From positions 1 to 8,442 of IMG/VR virus record IMGVR_UViG_3300005859_000132: DNA of 8,442 nt; one strand, given 5' to 3'. Shown here piece after piece: positions 114 through 7,751 of the stretch. The number at the start of each line of letters is the position of its first letter. Position 1 is the stretch's first letter. The position numbers and the translations under genes were made by a program. The notes under the pieces were generated by a model. That model saw nothing but the letters and a program-made list of their open reading frames with translations. It searched no databases and was not told where the DNA came from.

Positions 114-214
114 TTATGTCCCCGAATTAAAAATTTGAAATATGACAAATTTAAATATTCGAGAATTTAATAGCTTAATATATTCATCATTAAAAAAAGA
201 ATATAAAAAAAGAT

Positions 215-487: not shown

Positions 488-558
488 ACATTTCTTTATT
501 TTTATAAAATATATAAACGTGACATATACATTTAAATGTCAGGTTTTCATTTTGAAAT

Positions 559-3311: not shown

Positions 3312-3509
3312 TTGTATATAGGATATTTCATAATAAGTAACTCTCGGAATTATCTTAATTTTTTAGTCTATAATTTCCACAATTCATATACAAAATATTA
3401 TGTATATAGCTTTTGTCTTGAATTATTCATCAATTTCAACAATTATTATTCATCATATTACATATACGGCGTGAAAATTTATATTGTAGAAATTAAAATT
3501 TTTAATTGA
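3312..3509 (+). CDS. Doubtful ORF upstream of the capsid gene (position of SIRV ORF75/76)
   Basis: TTG start and Y/N/F/I-rich composition typical of AT-rich non-coding DNA. It overlaps the capsid promoter; only synteny supports it. Confidence 0.25.
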   Translation: MYIGYFIISNSRNYLNFLVYNFHNSYTKYYVYSFCLELFINFNNYYSSYYIYGVKIYIVEIKIFN

Positions 3510-3515
3510 CCAAAA
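3472..3515 (+). promoter_or_regulatory. Putative capsid gene promoter (BRE+TATA, no TGTCA)
   Basis: GAAAATTTATATT at about 3473-3485, about 30 nt before ATG 3516. Confidence 0.5.
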
Positions 3516-3920
3516 ATGGCGAAAGGTCACACACCAAGAAGCTATTCACAAAGATACGCAAAATGGGGAGCTAAGTTTACTGCATTTTCAAATCCTACTG
3601 TAGCTAGTACAATATTAACTAATGTATCTCCTGTAGCTCAAGAAAACTTCCAGACTAATGTACCAAAATTTGTAGCTGTTAATCAACAAGTAGCCGCAGT
3701 ACTTTCCGAATACGGAATTACTGGCCCACAAAGAGCAATTTATCAAGGTTATGGACTTAAGGTAGCTAGAGCTTTAAATAGGTTAGGCGGAGGCCCTGCT
3801 TTAGTAAATATGATAAACGGTTTGAAGGCTTATTATATAAATGCCTTTAATGCTAATCCAACTGTTCTAGATGCAGTTACCAATATAATTACTGGATCTC
3901 CAACTGGATACGTGAGCTAA
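3516..3920 (+). CDS. Rudivirus major capsid protein (ORF134/gp26, SIRV2 fold)
   Basis: 134 aa, MAKGHTPRSYSQRYAKW..KF.AFSNPTVASTIL..GITGP.RAIYQG.GLKVARALNRLGGGPALVNMINGLK.YYI.AFNANP.VLDAVTNIITGSPTGYVS, close to the SIRV coat protein as recalled. Confidence 0.98.
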   Translation: MAKGHTPRSYSQRYAKWGAKFTAFSNPTVASTILTNVSPVAQENFQTNVPKFVAVNQQVAAVLSEYGITGPQRAIYQGYGLKVARALNRLGGGPALVNMINGLKAYYINAFNANPTVLDAVTNIITGSPTGYVS

Positions 3921-3944
3921 AAAGTTCTATATTATCTTTAAAGC

Positions 3945-4010
3945 TATTCTATTTTTTTATTTTTTTAATTTTAGAATTCTAGTTCAAATTTAAATTTTAA
4001 AAAAATTTAC
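3945..4010. terminator. T-rich terminator region between the convergent capsid and zinc-finger genes
   Basis: ttttttta-ttttttt on + at about 3952-3966 and an A-tract at about 3999-4005 that serves the - strand. Confidence 0.5.
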
Positions 4011-4019
4011 TTTTAACTT

Positions 4020-4190
4020 TTAATCATTATCTTCTACTTTTGTTTCGACATATTCATAAGTTTTCTTACTAATTCTTTTACAGTCACTTAATTTTAAGTT
4101 TTTGTTATGTCTTTTTATATGGTTTATCATACTATTTCTGTTTCTACTGATAAAACCACAAATTGGACATTCGTATAAAAATATGCCCAT
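4020..4190 (-). CDS. C2H2 zinc-finger protein (SIRV ORF55-like), 56 aa; not in the ORF track
   Basis: MGIFLYECPICGFISRNRNSMINHIKRHNKNLKLSDCKRISKKTYEYVETKVEDND has C-x2-C-x12-H-x3-H. Syntenic between the capsid and glycosyltransferase genes. Confidence 0.88.
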   Translation of the reverse strand: MGIFLYECPICGFISRNRNSMINHIKRHNKNLKLSDCKRISKKTYEYVETKVEDND

Positions 4191-4290
4191 GTGCTTAATT
4201 TCAAACAGGACAAATATAAAAGCTTTGAACTTGCACTGGTTCAGCCTTAATTTAGAAAAAAAGAATTTCTAGTTTGGCTTCACCATATGA

Positions 4291-4316
4291 TTTTTAAGTG
4301 TCATGACATTTAAAAA
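4291..4316. promoter_or_regulatory. Palindromic overlapping divergent promoter
   Basis: TTTTTAAG-TGTCATGACA-TTTAAAAA is a near-perfect 26-bp palindrome that reads TATA+TGTCA on both strands, with ATGs at 4323 (+) and 4286 (-). Confidence 0.75.
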
Positions 4317-4322
4317 TTCTTC

Positions 4323-5354
4323 ATGGAAGTGTCGAACACAGTTCGCCACAAAACCGTAATTTTGACTATGAATTATTCTTCAATTCGAAATGTAGCAGAA
4401 GATATAGCTCAAGTTCTTAGAAAGAATGGAGAAATTGTAACAATTTCAACAAATCCATATTTAATACCACAAAGTGATAAATTAATTGTTTTTGTTCCAT
4501 TTCATCCGCCATCACTGAATCCGTATCTTTTTACATTTCATGAATTTAAAGGAGAAAAATACTTTTATACAACTTGTGATGGTCAGCCTAATTTAAATAT
4601 TGTAAATCAATATCTATTAAAAGACATAAAATTTATTCCAAATTCAAAATTTACAGCTCAAAATCTACAGGAGGCTGGACTAGATGTAGATTTGCCGGTT
4701 TTTCATGGAGTTAACTTTGAAATTGTAGAAAAAGCTGAAAAATTAGCTATTCAATTAAAACAAAAGTTGGATAAAGACTTTCCAGACACGATAAAATTTG
4801 GCATAGTTTCTGGTTTAACTAAGAGAAAAAACATGGATTTAATGTTGAAAGTTTTCCAGGAGATAAATACTAAAATTCCAGATTTAGCTAAAAAGGTTCA
4901 CTTTTTTGTTATTTCTCATAAACAATTTAAAGATTTTGAAGTTCCTGAAAATGTACATTTTGTTTCAGAATTTGGACTAAATCCTAGAGAATATATTTTT
5001 GCATTTTACAAAATTATGGATTTTACAATTGTACCGAGTGGAACAGAAGGGTTTGGGATGCCAGTTCTAGAAAGTATGGCCATGGGTACTCCAGTTATCC
5101 ATCAACTTATGCCTCCATTTGATGAATTTACATCATGGCAGTGGAATTTATTAATAAAATCTAGTGAAGTTGAAGAGTATTACGATAAAGATCATGGACA
5201 AAAATGGAGAATTCATAAATTTGATATTCAAGATATGGTAAGTGCAATATTAATAGCTTCAGAACTTCAAGATAGAGAAGAAAGAAGTAAAAACTTAAGA
5301 GAATTAGCTAAGAGATATGATATTAATAATTTATATGTCAGATTCTTAGAATGA
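4323..5354 (+). CDS. Glycosyltransferase, GT-B fold, family 4 (SIRV ORF335-like)
   Basis: KRKN donor-binding region and PSGTEGFGMPVLESMAMGTPVI (E-x7-E) signature. Confidence 0.95.
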   Translation: MEVSNTVRHKTVILTMNYSSIRNVAEDIAQVLRKNGEIVTISTNPYLIPQSDKLIVFVPFHPPSLNPYLFTFHEFKGEKYFYTTCDGQPNLNIVNQYLLKDIKFIPNSKFTAQNLQEAGLDVDLPVFHGVNFEIVEKAEKLAIQLKQKLDKDFPDTIKFGIVSGLTKRKNMDLMLKVFQEINTKIPDLAKKVHFFVISHKQFKDFEVPENVHFVSEFGLNPREYIFAFYKIMDFTIVPSGTEGFGMPVLESMAMGTPVIHQLMPPFDEFTSWQWNLLIKSSEVEEYYDKDHGQKWRIHKFDIQDMVSAILIASELQDREERSKNLRELAKRYDINNLYVRFLE

Positions 5355-5372
5355 TTTCGTAAATCGATAAAC

Positions 5373-5417
5373 CGAAAAATTTATATGCATAAAATAGTAT
5401 ATAATTATTGTGAGAGT
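5373..5417 (+). promoter_or_regulatory. BRE-TATA promoter, accessory class, copy 1
   Basis: CGAAAAATTTATAT begins 45 nt before ATG 5418; similar to the copies at 6797 and 7277. Confidence 0.65.
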
Positions 5418-6694: not shown

Positions 6695-6796
6695 AATTAT
6701 TTATTTCACAAAACAAGAATAAATAAAATCAAAGCAAATTTGCCATATACATTATATTATGTATATGCATTTGTTAATTGACATGTAAAGCATGAG

Positions 6797-6843
6797 CGAA
6801 AGATTTATATATTTAGATTTCGAAATGTATAATAGGGATAAAT
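6797..6843 (+). promoter_or_regulatory. BRE-TATA promoter, accessory class, copy 2
   Basis: GCGAAAGATTTATATATTT; the C at 6797 is 47 nt before ATG 6844. Confidence 0.7.
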
Positions 6844-7197
6844 ATGAGAAGTCAAAATAGACAAATTAAAAGTAAAAACAAATTACTTTTTTGTAAATTA
6901 TGTGCATTTGTAGCTCAAGATGAAAATGAGTTAGATTTTCATTATAAAATGGCTCATGATCCGGATCCAGATTTAGAATATGAATTTGAGCCAATTTTTG
7001 TAGATAAAAAAACTTATAAGAAATTGTTATATCAAGATTATTTAAGAATTTGCAAATCATATGTATGTGTCATACGTCCAAGAATTGATATTGAAGATGA
7101 TAAAAGTGAAATAAGAAGACTGTACAGAGAATATTGTTCAACTTGTGTATTAAAAAAGTTTTTAGTCGAAGAATTGAAACAAAATGGAAAAATGTGA
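6844..7197 (+). CDS. Zinc-finger protein (one C2H2 finger plus four further Cys)
   Basis: CKLC-x12-HYKMAH, acidic linker DPDPDLEYEFE, then CKSYVC and CSTC. Confidence 0.82.
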   Translation: MRSQNRQIKSKNKLLFCKLCAFVAQDENELDFHYKMAHDPDPDLEYEFEPIFVDKKTYKKLLYQDYLRICKSYVCVIRPRIDIEDDKSEIRRLYREYCSTCVLKKFLVEELKQNGKM

Positions 7198-7263: not shown

Positions 7264-7276
7264 AATGAACAGAAAG

Positions 7277-7323
7277 CGAAAGATTTTTATATTTCGAAAG
7301 CGTATATTATATTGTGAAAGAAA
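7277..7323 (+). promoter_or_regulatory. BRE-TATA promoter, accessory class, copy 3
   Basis: GCGAAAGATTTTTATATTT; the C at 7277 is 47 nt before ATG 7324. Confidence 0.7.
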
Positions 7324-7539
7324 ATGGGAAGATATGAAGTTGAGCAAAAAATAGTCGAATTAGCTCATAAATTTGCAGTACAATATGGAGAAGAAATTTT
7401 ACATCTAAAAGTTGATGAATTAATAATGTATCTATCATCTTATTTTGACTATGAGTCATGGTTAATTTTTAAGCATAACCAATATGAGTTATTAAAACTT
7501 TTTGTAGAAACTGTAAAAGAAGATTTATCTAAATCTTAA
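7324..7539 (+). CDS. Small acidic helical hypothetical protein
   Basis: 71-aa ORF with its own promoter and a helical amphipathic pattern; about 13 D/E versus 8 K/R. Confidence 0.78.
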   Translation: MGRYEVEQKIVELAHKFAVQYGEEILHLKVDELIMYLSSYFDYESWLIFKHNQYELLKLFVETVKEDLSKS

Positions 7540-7751
7540 GTTAATATTTTTTTAATTTTCTCTTTGTCAATCTTGTAAGGTATGTAAAATTTATAATTCC
7601 AAGTATTCGGATAAAAAATCCAACCTTTACGTTTTCTAAGTATATAAAATTTCCTATTCCATGGATTTTTATAAGGAATATAAAATTTTCCGTTCCATGT
7701 ATTTGGGTCAAAATTCCAACCTTTTTTCTTTTTAACTATCATGTTTATCAT
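7536..7751 (-). CDS. Basic, Trp/aromatic-rich internal-repeat protein
   Basis: Repeats KKKKGWNFDPNTWNGKFYIPYK / NPWNRKFYI / RKRKGWIFYPNTWNYKFYIPYK. Starts just after the upstream gene's stop; alternative ATG at 7742. Confidence 0.65.
   Translation of the reverse strand: MINMIVKKKKGWNFDPNTWNGKFYIPYKNPWNRKFYILRKRKGWIFYPNTWNYKFYIPYKIDKEKIKKILT
7576..7733. repeat. Imperfect ~62-bp direct repeat with 96-bp period, plus a partial middle copy
   Basis: taaggtatgtaaaatttataattccaagtattcggataaaaaatccaaccttt (from 7576) versus taaggaatataaaattttccgttccatgtatttgggtcaaaattccaaccttt (from 7672); partial copy at about 7641-7668. Confidence 0.85.

What the first reader, a model, noticed from the sequence alone, without database searches (positions are those of the whole stretch)
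4190..4286. Zinc-finger gene has an in-frame 32-codon leader broken by one amber stop, with predicted hairpins
Seen: the - strand promoter at 4304-4316 points to ATG 4286, at the same spacing as other apparently leaderless genes, not to the zinc-finger ATG at 4190. ATG 4286 is in frame with the zinc finger: MVKPN*KFFFSKLRLNQCKFKAFIFVLFEIKH-MGIFLYECPIC..., with a single TAG at codon 6. The leader can fold: AGCC..TAGAAA/TTTCTA..GGCT places the TAG in a stem, followed by TGAAC-CAGTGCAA-GTTCA. A 96-nt structured leader is unusual in Sulfolobales. Inference: a uORF/readthrough switch, a structured regulatory leader or small RNA, or a recently truncated hydrophobic N-terminus.
Basis: partly seen in the sequence, partly recalled or inferred. 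Interest (0 to 1): 0.6.

Follow-up and report, generated by a model that had tools for sequence, protein, structure and literature searches.

The report
Dispersed viral repeat inserted before zinc-finger gene
The "96-nt leader with an amber stop" is non-coding: it is one copy of a small hairpin-forming repeat scattered through Yellowstone rod-shaped archaeal viruses, inserted in this virus alone between the zinc-finger gene's old promoter and its start codon, and it carries what looks like a replacement promoter.

Summary

The interpretation mostly fails. In 14 related rudivirus genomes and contigs the zinc-finger ATG sits directly behind that same promoter. Only this window has 96 extra bases.

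Those bases (element 4283-4191, plus ATG) are a shortened copy of a repeat that is 117 nt long at full length. The repeat lies at about ten different intergenic sites in Usarudivirus genomes, with 1-3 copies found in each genome searched. Copies are present or absent between related genomes, always in steps of 12 bp (96, 108, 120). Copy lengths (69, 93, 105, 117, 165) also differ by multiples of 12. That explains why the insert is in frame.

No reading frame is conserved across copies. The second is not.

It has exactly the same spacing to ATG 4190 as the old promoter has to ATG 4286, and no Shine-Dalgarno motif precedes ATG 4190.

Most likely the gene is still leaderless, driven from inside the insert. 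No RNA data exist to prove this.

The repeat family matches no Rfam family and I found no description of it in the searchable literature.

The parts
4309..4316 (-). Distal (ancestral) TATA box TTTTTAAA of the zinc-finger gene. It is half of a compact bidirectional promoter shared with the glycosyltransferase gene.
   Evidence: It aligns with the only zinc-finger promoter of SIRV4-11, V3, V60 and L014, where the ATG follows 22 nt later.
4299..4308 (.). 10-bp palindrome TGTCATGACA between the two TATA boxes. It supplies the rudiviral GTC motif to both divergent promoters.
   Evidence: The GTC motif downstream of TATA in SIRV promoters is reported in PMC5569661, citing Kessler 2004.
4291..4298 (+). 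TATA box TTTTTAAG of the glycosyltransferase gene, whose ATG is at 4323.
4284..4286 (-). ATG at the position the zinc-finger start codon holds in relatives. It now heads a 5-codon ORF (MVKPN*). It is also one copy of the 3-4 nt ATG(G) repeat that brackets the insert.
   Evidence: Alignments; translation.
4191..4283 (-). 93-nt copy of the 117-nt Usarudivirus dispersed element (GTGAAGCC...AAGCAC). With the flanking ATG it makes the 96-nt (8 x 12) insertion.
   Evidence: Covariance model R1 scores it 77.2 bits, E 2.6e-13. blastn gives 91% identity over 56 nt to SIRV11 18149-18204. Alignments.
4243..4279 (-). Hairpin 1 of the element: outer stem 4279-4276/4246-4243, inner stem 4271-4267/4257-4253. 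The TAG lies in the inner stem.
   Evidence: 97% of cells paired, 3 pairs with compensatory changes, 0 of 500 shuffles reach the score. Still supported over 23 distinct copies.
4256..4262 (-). T7 run in the loop of hairpin 1. It is a possible intrinsic stop for archaeal RNA polymerase on transcripts from the distal promoter.
   Evidence: The sequence is. The role is inferred from general knowledge of oligo-T termination in archaea. The run is also present in the SIRV11-type copies but not in others.
4209..4221 (-). Proximal promoter candidate inside the insert: TTTTATATT (4221-4213) plus TGTC (4212-4209), 18 nt before ATG 4190.
   Evidence: The W6TGTC motif (six A/T then TGTC) occurs 17 times against 6.2 +/- 2.4 in shuffles; 7 of them lie 18-30 nt before a gene start. 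This 17-nt stretch is the only part of the window's copy with no counterpart in other copies.
4020..4190 (-). C2H2 zinc-finger gene, 56 aa, with the pattern CX2CX12HX3H.
   Evidence: Pfam zf-C2H2 E 1.2e-4, 22.7 bits, below the 25.2 cut-off. Homologues are present in all SIRVs; the SIRV3 record names it a C2H2-finger transcriptional regulator.
4323..5354 (+). Divergent glycosyltransferase gene. Bases 4326-4349 are a 24-nt (2 x 12) in-frame insertion shared only with SIRV10.
185..192 (.). Empty site A. At this point the nearest relative's contig carries a full-length (117-nt) copy of the element, as a clean 120-nt gap.
   Evidence: the collinearity break is.

Best explanation
Bases 4286-4191 are not a coding leader. 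They are a lineage-specific 96-bp (8 x 12) insertion of a small non-coding repeat.

The repeat:
- It is 117 nt long at full length, begins GTGAGG/GTGAAG and ends AAGCAC.
- It has two covarying hairpins.
- It is scattered over about ten intergenic or intercistronic sites in Usarudivirus genomes.
- Copies are gained, lost and resized in steps of 12 bp. This is the known but unexplained rudiviral 12-bp indel behaviour.

What happened here:
- The copy landed on the ATGG of the leaderless zinc-finger gene.
- The ancestral TATA/TGTC promoter now aims at an orphan ATG (4286).
- The real ORF keeps its own ATG (4190).
- This copy has lost 24 nt of hairpin 2. In that place it carries a canonical rudiviral promoter (TATA 4221-4213, TGTC 4212-4209) at the same 18-nt distance from ATG 4190 as in the ancestral arrangement.

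How it most likely works now:
- The zinc-finger mRNA starts at or next to 4190 and stays leaderless.
- Transcripts from the old promoter either stop at the T7 run in the hairpin-1 loop or read through as a minor leadered form.

Shown: the insertion, the repeat family, the 12-bp steps, the covariation, the promoter-like motif and its geometry.
Inferred: which promoter fires, the termination at T7, and the way the copy arrived (ATGG microhomology or a 3-nt duplication).

Confidence by part: about 0.9 that the 96 nt are an inserted copy of a dispersed repeat and non-coding; about 0.6 that the proximal promoter drives a leaderless mRNA.
For: 1. Orthologous locus. SIRV4, 7, 8, 9, 10, 11, V3, V60 and contigs L013, L014, L017 (SIRV5 via L016) have TATA, then 22 nt, then the zinc-finger ATG, with no insert. 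Only the window has the 96 nt.
2. Reads. Only run X1 covers 4204-4270 (depth 238, similar to the flanks). Three other hot-spring runs cover the flanks but have zero depth there.
3. Paralogous copies. blastn finds the same sequence at other loci in SIRV11, V60, V65 and V3. It is also at site A of the nearest contig, G002. Three more rudiviral contigs of the same metagenome carry it.
4. Model search. Model R1 finds 1-3 copies in each of the nine Usarudivirus genomes searched, and none in SIRV2.
5. Presence/absence in 12-bp steps: 96 at site B; 120 at site A; 120 and 108 at site F; 108 at site G. Copy lengths 69, 93, 105, 117 and 165 are all 9 mod 12.
6. Literature. 12-bp indels are described as a common feature of rudiviruses (PMC4390879).
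7. Structure. Hairpin 1 is 97% paired with 3 compensatory pairs, and 0 of 500 shuffles reach its score. Over 23 distinct copies, 16 pairs have compensatory changes, again 0 of 500.
8. Promoter. TATA+TGTC sits 18 nt before ATG 4190, identical to the distal geometry and to other genes in the window. The GTC motif is a documented SIRV promoter feature.
9. No GGTGA-type Shine-Dalgarno motif lies in the 15 nt before ATG 4190.
10. No frame is conserved across copies.
Against: - There are no RNA data for this virus or any close relative, so no transcription start is mapped.
- TATA-like strings are common in a 74% A+T genome.
- The distal promoter is intact and will probably fire, so some 96-nt-leadered mRNA may exist.
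- No near-identical donor copy was found. The best matches are 85% (SIRV11) and 80% (G002) over the left part, so neither the event's age nor its mechanism is known.
- X1 may be the window's own source sample, so the read support is not independent. No listed contig was shown to bridge both junctions.
- The alignment behind one search was fitted to the model, which favours the structure.
Confidence: 0.65

Rival explanations
1. Structured 5' leader. The zinc-finger mRNA starts at about 4286 from the old promoter, and the 96-nt element acts as a regulatory 5' UTR, for example through hairpin-dependent stability or attenuation at the T7 run.
For: - The distal TATA/TGTC is intact and identical in geometry to the working promoter of relatives.
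- Hairpin 1 is a conserved structure.
- G-U pairs outnumber A-C mismatches 64 to 25, which favours folding of this strand.
- Many other copies lie in the sense orientation inside operons, so they are probably transcribed.
Against: - No Shine-Dalgarno motif precedes ATG 4190, so an internal AUG 96 nt from the 5' end would be poorly translated in Sulfolobales (established knowledge).
- A canonical promoter sits at the right distance inside the insert.
- A T7 run 25-31 nt from the start should stop many transcripts.
- The overall fold is only z = -1.81.
Confidence: 0.2
2. The element copy is made as a separate small RNA from the orphaned old promoter. It would start at about 4286 and end at the T7 run or at the element's end, with a function of its own.
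For: - The old promoter ends 3 nt before the element's first base.
- The strand asymmetry of G-U pairs.
- Several other copies have a TATA-like string 20-30 nt upstream.
Against: - Upstream TATA-like strings are expected by chance in this genome and are absent at the intercistronic copies.
- No Rfam family matches.
- There are no expression data.
Confidence: 0.12
3. The 96 nt are ancestral at this locus and were deleted, possibly several times, in the other Usarudiviruses.
For: - Icelandic SIRV1, 2 and 3 also have a 131-nt spacer here.
- Precise 12-bp-step deletions clearly occur in this family.
Against: - The Icelandic spacer shows no convincing similarity to the element, and model R1 finds no copy in SIRV2.
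- All 14 North American relatives, including the two with 93-95% identical zinc-finger proteins, lack it.
- The short form keeps a perfect promoter-to-ATG geometry.
Confidence: 0.06
4. Programmed amber readthrough, a uORF switch, or a decayed N-terminal extension giving an 88-aa protein.
For: Only that the frame is open apart from one TAG.
Against: - About 23% of random 31-codon frames of this composition have one stop or fewer.
- Being in frame follows from the 12-nt step size.
- The frame is not conserved in other copies, where stops fall at other positions.
- No relative has any N-terminal extension.
- Nothing in the genome points to another genetic code.
Confidence: 0.02
5. Metagenome assembly artefact that pasted another locus into the contig.
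For: The window is a metagenomic contig, and the same sample holds other copies of the element.
Against: - An independent assembly of run X1 covers 4204-4270 at the depth of its flanks.
- The copy differs from every other sampled copy.
- Both junctions are clean and the length is a multiple of 12, like genuine indels in isolate genomes.
Confidence: 0.03

Closest known systems
12-bp indels of rudiviruses and lipothrixviruses (Peng et al. 2004, as summarised in PMC4390879)
   Same: All presence/absence differences measured (96, 108, 120) and all copy-length variants (steps of 12, 24 and 48) are exact multiples of 12 bp. They occur between related genomes, in both coding and non-coding DNA.
   Different: The published phenomenon concerns short 12-bp blocks, mostly inside ORFs. 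Here whole structured elements of 69-165 nt come and go at many loci and are recognisable as one sequence family.
PeSL promoter/stem-loop cassettes of T4-type phages (PMC2839356, PMC4122927)
   Same: Both are short repeated intergenic modules in a viral genome that combine a stem-loop with a promoter-like motif. Both sit at gene boundaries and differ in presence between close relatives.
   Different: This is an archaeal virus with TATA/GTC promoters. Only the 105-nt and 93-nt variants have the TATA+GTC signature. A role in gene shuffling was not tested. Length changes in 12-bp steps are not a PeSL property.
Bacterial REP/BIME, ERIC and Correia-type small dispersed repeats, and MITEs
   Same: Multi-copy, non-coding, hairpin-forming, about 100 nt, intercistronic, in either orientation, with insertion polymorphism.
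   Different: There are no terminal inverted repeats beyond GTG/CAC. No clear target-site duplication is seen, only 3-4 nt repeats or Shine-Dalgarno-like direct repeats. No partner transposase is known, and no copy was found in 185,579 prokaryote genomes by core pattern.
Leaderless Sulfolobales and rudiviral promoters (TATA, BRE, and the virus-specific GTC motif; Kessler 2004 via PMC5569661)
   Same: Both the distal and the proximal site have a TATA octamer, then TGTC, then 18 nt, then ATG, like seven other genes in the window.
   Different: Two such promoters in tandem, 96 nt apart, before one gene. The upstream one is orphaned.

Membership tests
Rudiviral 12-bp indel phenomenon | Insertions or deletions between related genomes whose length is 12 bp or a multiple of it | tested here: met
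   Differences are 96, 120 and 108. Copy lengths 69, 93, 105, 117 and 165 are all 9 mod 12.
MITE (non-autonomous transposon) | Terminal inverted repeats | tested here: not met
   Only GTG...CAC is shared between the two ends.
MITE (non-autonomous transposon) | Target-site duplication of fixed length | tested here: inconclusive
   The window has ATG(G) on both sides. Other copies have GTGAGG-like or GGTGA-like direct repeats of variable length, and the junctions are ambiguous by +/- 4 nt.
MITE (non-autonomous transposon) | Multiple dispersed copies with insertion polymorphism | tested here: met
   About ten distinct genomic contexts. Filled and empty states were seen at sites A, B, F and G.
MITE (non-autonomous transposon) | A related autonomous element with a transposase | not tested
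   A core-pattern scan of host genomes found nothing. No search for a transposase was made.
PeSL-type promoter/stem-loop cassette | Stem-loop next to a functional promoter, repeated at gene boundaries | tested here: inconclusive
   The stem-loops are shown by covariation. The promoter is supported only by a consensus match: TATA+TGTC in the 93-nt and 105-nt variants, and an A-rich TATA-like loop without GTC in the 117-nt form. Promoter activity is not testable here.
Known RNA families (Rfam 15) | Score at or above a family's gathering threshold | tested here: not met
   No hit on any element copy in three loci, including the window's region.
uORF or stop-codon readthrough leader | The reading frame and the stop position are conserved in relatives | tested here: not met
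   The region is absent at the orthologous locus in 14 relatives. In paralogous copies the stops fall at different positions and only one copy has an ATG.
Leaderless rudiviral promoter | TATA box about 26 nt upstream of the start, with the GTC motif just downstream of the TATA | tested here: met
   This holds for both 4316-4305 (to ATG 4286) and 4221-4209 (to ATG 4190). The actual transcription start is not testable with these tools.
C2H2 zinc finger | CX2-4C...HX3-5H motif and a Pfam zf-C2H2 match | tested here: inconclusive
   The motif CX2CX12HX3H is present at residues 8-28. The Pfam score is 22.7 bits against a 25.2 cut-off, E 1.2e-4.

The most novel reading that the evidence does not exclude
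The 117-nt element is an active, structured mobile unit or RNA of Usarudiviruses. Its gain, loss and resizing in exact 12-bp steps would expose the mechanism behind the 12-bp indels that have puzzled rudivirus workers since 2004. One possibility is replication or repair constrained by the 12 bp bound per capsid-protein dimer (a figure reported for AFV1 in PMC5517147). In this window it would have rewired a transcription-factor gene by bringing its own promoter.
Probability: 0.25. Interest if true: 0.75.

Novelty: new variant of a known kind. Interest (0 to 1): 0.5.

Why it matters
For the finding itself, the result is deflationary. There is no recoding, no uORF switch and no lost N-terminus, and the gene probably still makes a leaderless mRNA.

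The by-product is more interesting:
- A previously unreported family of hairpin-forming dispersed repeats is present in every North American SIRV genome searched.
- Its copies come and go between related genomes, and their lengths change only in multiples of 12 bp.
- That gives the long-known 12-bp indels a concrete, traceable substrate.
- It is also a candidate example of promoter replacement by a repeat in an archaeal virus.
- Because SIRV4, SIRV11, V3, V60 and V65 are cultured, expression, processing and mobility of the element can be tested directly.

Tried and rejected
- The sigma-70 promoter and hairpin-terminator scan does not apply to archaea and showed nothing.
- The exact 25-mer of the insert is absent from IMG/VR.
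- The first 18-mer pattern gave one chance hit in a GC-rich terminase-like gene (L024).
- The 23-nt degenerate core gave four chance hits in unrelated contigs (L043, L045, L051, L053) and none in 185,579 prokaryote genomes. So there is no sign of a host-derived MITE.
- Rfam gave no family. The microRNA-like hits at the end of L048 are long AT-rich hairpins near a genome terminus.
- Plain blastn missed the copies in SIRV4, 7, 8, 9 and 10. The covariance model later found them.
- I asked whether the element is the early-gene regulatory sequence of Usarudiviruses (PMC11065993). Its supplements contain none of the element's core strings, and the listed V60 anti-defence genes lie near the genome ends, not at the element sites. 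No link was found.
- I asked whether the element is built of 12-nt units. Autocorrelation shows a period of about 7 nt, not 12.
- A resemblance of part of hairpin 2 to the Sulfolobus CRISPR repeat 3' end was considered from memory only and not pursued. By eye it matches about 13 of 24 bases.
- No run on record as RNA was found, so expression could not be examined.

Full report
**1. What is in the window**

The window is a metagenomic rudivirus contig, about 80% identical to Yellowstone SIRV4-11. IMG/VR treats it as a 25%-complete linear fragment.

Around the finding lie three genes:
- the major capsid protein gene, 3516-3920 (+);
- a 56-aa C2H2 zinc-finger gene, 4020-4190 (-);
- a glycosyltransferase gene, 4323-5354 (+).

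- TTTTTAAA at 4316-4309, then TGTC at 4308-4305;
- ATG at 4286, then 96 nt, then the zinc-finger ATG at 4190;
- in frame, with one TAG at 4271-4269.

**2. The orthologous locus in relatives**

I aligned the region from SIRV1, 2, 3, 4, 7, 8, 9, 10, 11, V3 and V60. I then aligned three IMG/VR contigs, L013, L014 and L017, plus SIRV4, SIRV5 and SIRV11 via L015, L016 and L018.

- Every North American relative has a compact bidirectional promoter: TATA, the palindrome TGTCATGACA, TATA.
- In all of them the zinc-finger ATG follows 22 nt after its TATA.
- This includes the two contigs whose zinc-finger proteins are 93-95% identical to the window's.
- The window's ATG 4286 sits where that start codon is. 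ATG 4190 is the homologue of the codon itself (ATGGGC...).
- The window alone has 96 extra bases between CATATGG and CACATGG.

Contigs of four hot-spring runs were laid on 3400-5400.
- Only X1 covers 4204-4270, at depth 238 against 244 and 123 in the neighbouring bins.
- X2, X3 and X10 cover the flanks but have zero depth there.
- So the insert is real DNA in one sample and absent from relatives elsewhere.
- X1 may be the source sample, and no bridging contig was listed.

**3. Where the 96 bases come from**

A blastn search of the insert found 56 nt at 91% identity in SIRV11. It also found 80-83% identity in V60, V65 and V3. All these matches lie at quite different, unannotated intergenic places.

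The nearest relative's contig (G002, collinear at 79-90% identity) carries a full copy between a 133-aa and a 90-aa ORF.
- The window's orthologous site (about 185-192) lacks that copy, as a clean 120-nt gap.
- So G002 is filled at site A and empty at site B, and the window is the reverse.

A degenerate core pattern found further copies in three other rudiviral contigs of the same metagenome, and in SIRV11-like contigs. It found none in prokaryote genomes.

Six full-length copies from four distinct contexts are each exactly 117 nt, from GTGAGG/GTGAAG to a final AAGCAC-type end (AAACAC in one copy, TTTGAAC in the SIRV11-type copies). The V60 type is 105 nt and the window's copy is 93 nt.

A covariance model built on these copies (R1) found 1-3 copies in each of SIRV4, 7, 8, 9, 10, 11, V3, V60 and V65. 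SIRV2 had no hit better than E = 0.028.

Copy lengths are 69, 93, 105, 117 and 165 nt, which all differ by multiples of 12. The copies occupy about ten contexts. Several sit exactly between two co-directional genes:
- the element's initial GTGA supplies the upstream TGA stop;
- a GGTGA-like Shine-Dalgarno motif plus the next start codon follow the element's end.

**4. Steps of twelve**

Filled-versus-empty differences are:
- 96 nt at site B;
- 120 nt at site A;
- 120 nt (SIRV7, SIRV4) and 108 nt (SIRV8) at site F;
- 108 nt at site G, where the spacer is 115 nt in SIRV4 and 7 nt in SIRV11.

This is the 12-bp indel behaviour described for rudiviruses and lipothrixviruses (PMC4390879). It fully explains why ATG 4286 is in frame with the gene.

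The element itself has a sequence period of about 7 nt, not 12. A link to the 12 bp of DNA per capsid-protein repeat (reported for AFV1 in PMC5517147) is speculation.

**5. Structure**

On ten MAFFT-aligned copies, 97% of cells pair and three pairs show compensatory double changes (A-U/G-C, U-A/C-G, U-A/A-U/C-G). No shuffle of 500 reaches the observed covariation, and slid controls collapse.
- Over 23 distinct copies aligned to the model, 16 pairs show compensatory changes, again 0 of 500. That alignment leans towards the structure.
- The full-length (117-nt) copies have a second, 18-bp hairpin with an A-rich, TATA-like loop. The window's copy has lost it through a 24-nt deletion.
- The window's stretch folds only modestly better than shuffles (z = -1.81).
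- G-U pairs outnumber A-C mismatches 64 to 25, which favours folding of the GTGA-to-CAC strand. In the window that is the zinc-finger sense strand.
- No Rfam family matches.

**6. Coding potential**

- One stop or fewer in 31 codons is expected in about 23% of random frames at this composition.
- In other copies the same frame is closed at different positions, and only one copy has an ATG.
- No relative's zinc-finger protein has an N-terminal extension.
- Readthrough, a uORF switch and a decayed N-terminus are therefore rejected. No alternative genetic code was invoked.

**7. How the gene is probably expressed now**

- Inside the insert, TTTTATATT (4221-4213) is followed by TGTC (4212-4209) and then 18 nt to ATG 4190. 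The distal TGTC is also 18 nt from ATG 4286. Several other genes of the window follow the same TATA-TGTC-ATG plan.
- The motif W6TGTC (six A/T then TGTC) occurs 17 times against 6.2 +/- 2.4 in shuffles. Seven of them lie 18-30 nt before a gene start.
- A GTC just downstream of the TATA box is a documented signature of SIRV promoters (PMC5569661).
- These 17 nt are the only part of the window's copy without a counterpart in other copies. The 105-nt variants that sit just upstream of genes also carry W6TGTC, while the 117-nt variants do not.
- No Shine-Dalgarno motif precedes ATG 4190.
- I therefore favour a leaderless mRNA from the proximal promoter (about 0.6).
- The old promoter would give short RNAs ending at the T7 run (4262-4256), or a minor 96-nt-leadered form.
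- This is inference. No RNA run exists.

**8. Comparison with what is known, and verdict**

The nearest analogues are:
- the rudiviral 12-bp indels (membership feature met);
- the PeSL promoter/stem-loop cassettes of T4-type phages (PMC2839356, PMC4122927);
- bacterial REP, ERIC and Correia elements, and MITEs.

The element is not a MITE in the strict sense: it has no terminal inverted repeats, and a target-site duplication is unclear.

I found no description of this repeat family in the searchable literature.

Verdict:
- The thing itself is an ordinary non-coding insertion with a probable replacement promoter.
- The repeat family behind it is a new variant of a known kind and is moderately interesting.

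Noticed in passing
window 4326-4349: A 24-nt (2 x 12) in-frame insertion directly after the glycosyltransferase start codon. It is shared only with SIRV10 and mirrors the 96-nt insertion after the divergent gene's start codon.
   Followed up: partly
window 4291-4316: A compact bidirectional promoter: two TATA boxes flank the 10-bp palindrome TGTCATGACA. Each TATA lies just upstream of the other gene's predicted transcription start. It is conserved in all Usarudiviruses aligned.
   Followed up: partly
window 7573-7643 and 7669-7739: A 71-nt direct repeat (75% identity) with 96-nt (8 x 12) spacing inside ORF 7536-7751 (-). It may be another 12-bp-step duplication.
   Followed up: no
window 531-540 (+): A TATA+TGTC motif 18 nt before GTG 559. 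This suggests that ORF 559-906 (+, 115 aa), which overlaps the - strand ORF 547-756, may be the real gene there.
   Followed up: no
L078 784-948 (SIRV10, NC_034625 21583-21747): A 165-nt copy of the element that holds a nested 48-nt partial copy in inverted orientation, that is, an element inside an element. The same form occurs in SIRV9.
   Followed up: partly
L013 about 400-768 (IMGVR_UViG_3300005977_000014): Two zinc-finger genes in tandem. The upstream paralogue ends just before the promoter of the copy that is 95% identical to the window's.
   Followed up: no
L001 421-609 and the equivalent features in SIRV7-11 records: RefSeq annotates the zinc-finger ORF as 62 aa, starting at the ATG inside the palindrome. 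That ATG is only 4 nt after the TATA box, so the 56-aa start (ATGGGC or its equivalent) fits the promoter geometry better.
   Followed up: partly
Alignment, 3' end of the zinc-finger gene in SIRV8, 9 and 10: A 12-nt insertion (TAATTTCAAGTT) just after the zinc-finger stop codon in SIRV8, 9 and 10 only. This is another clean 12-bp indel.
   Followed up: no
Element copies in alignment A3: The 117-nt element has a strong internal sequence period of about 7 nt (AATTNNN-like units). The motif TTCAGAATTAAG occurs twice, once after each hairpin.
   Followed up: partly
window 6795-6851 and 7275-7331: Two + strand genes (starts at 6844 and 7324) share a 57-nt upstream block, AGCGAAAGATTT(A/T)TATATTT..., which looks like a duplicated promoter.
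   Followed up: no
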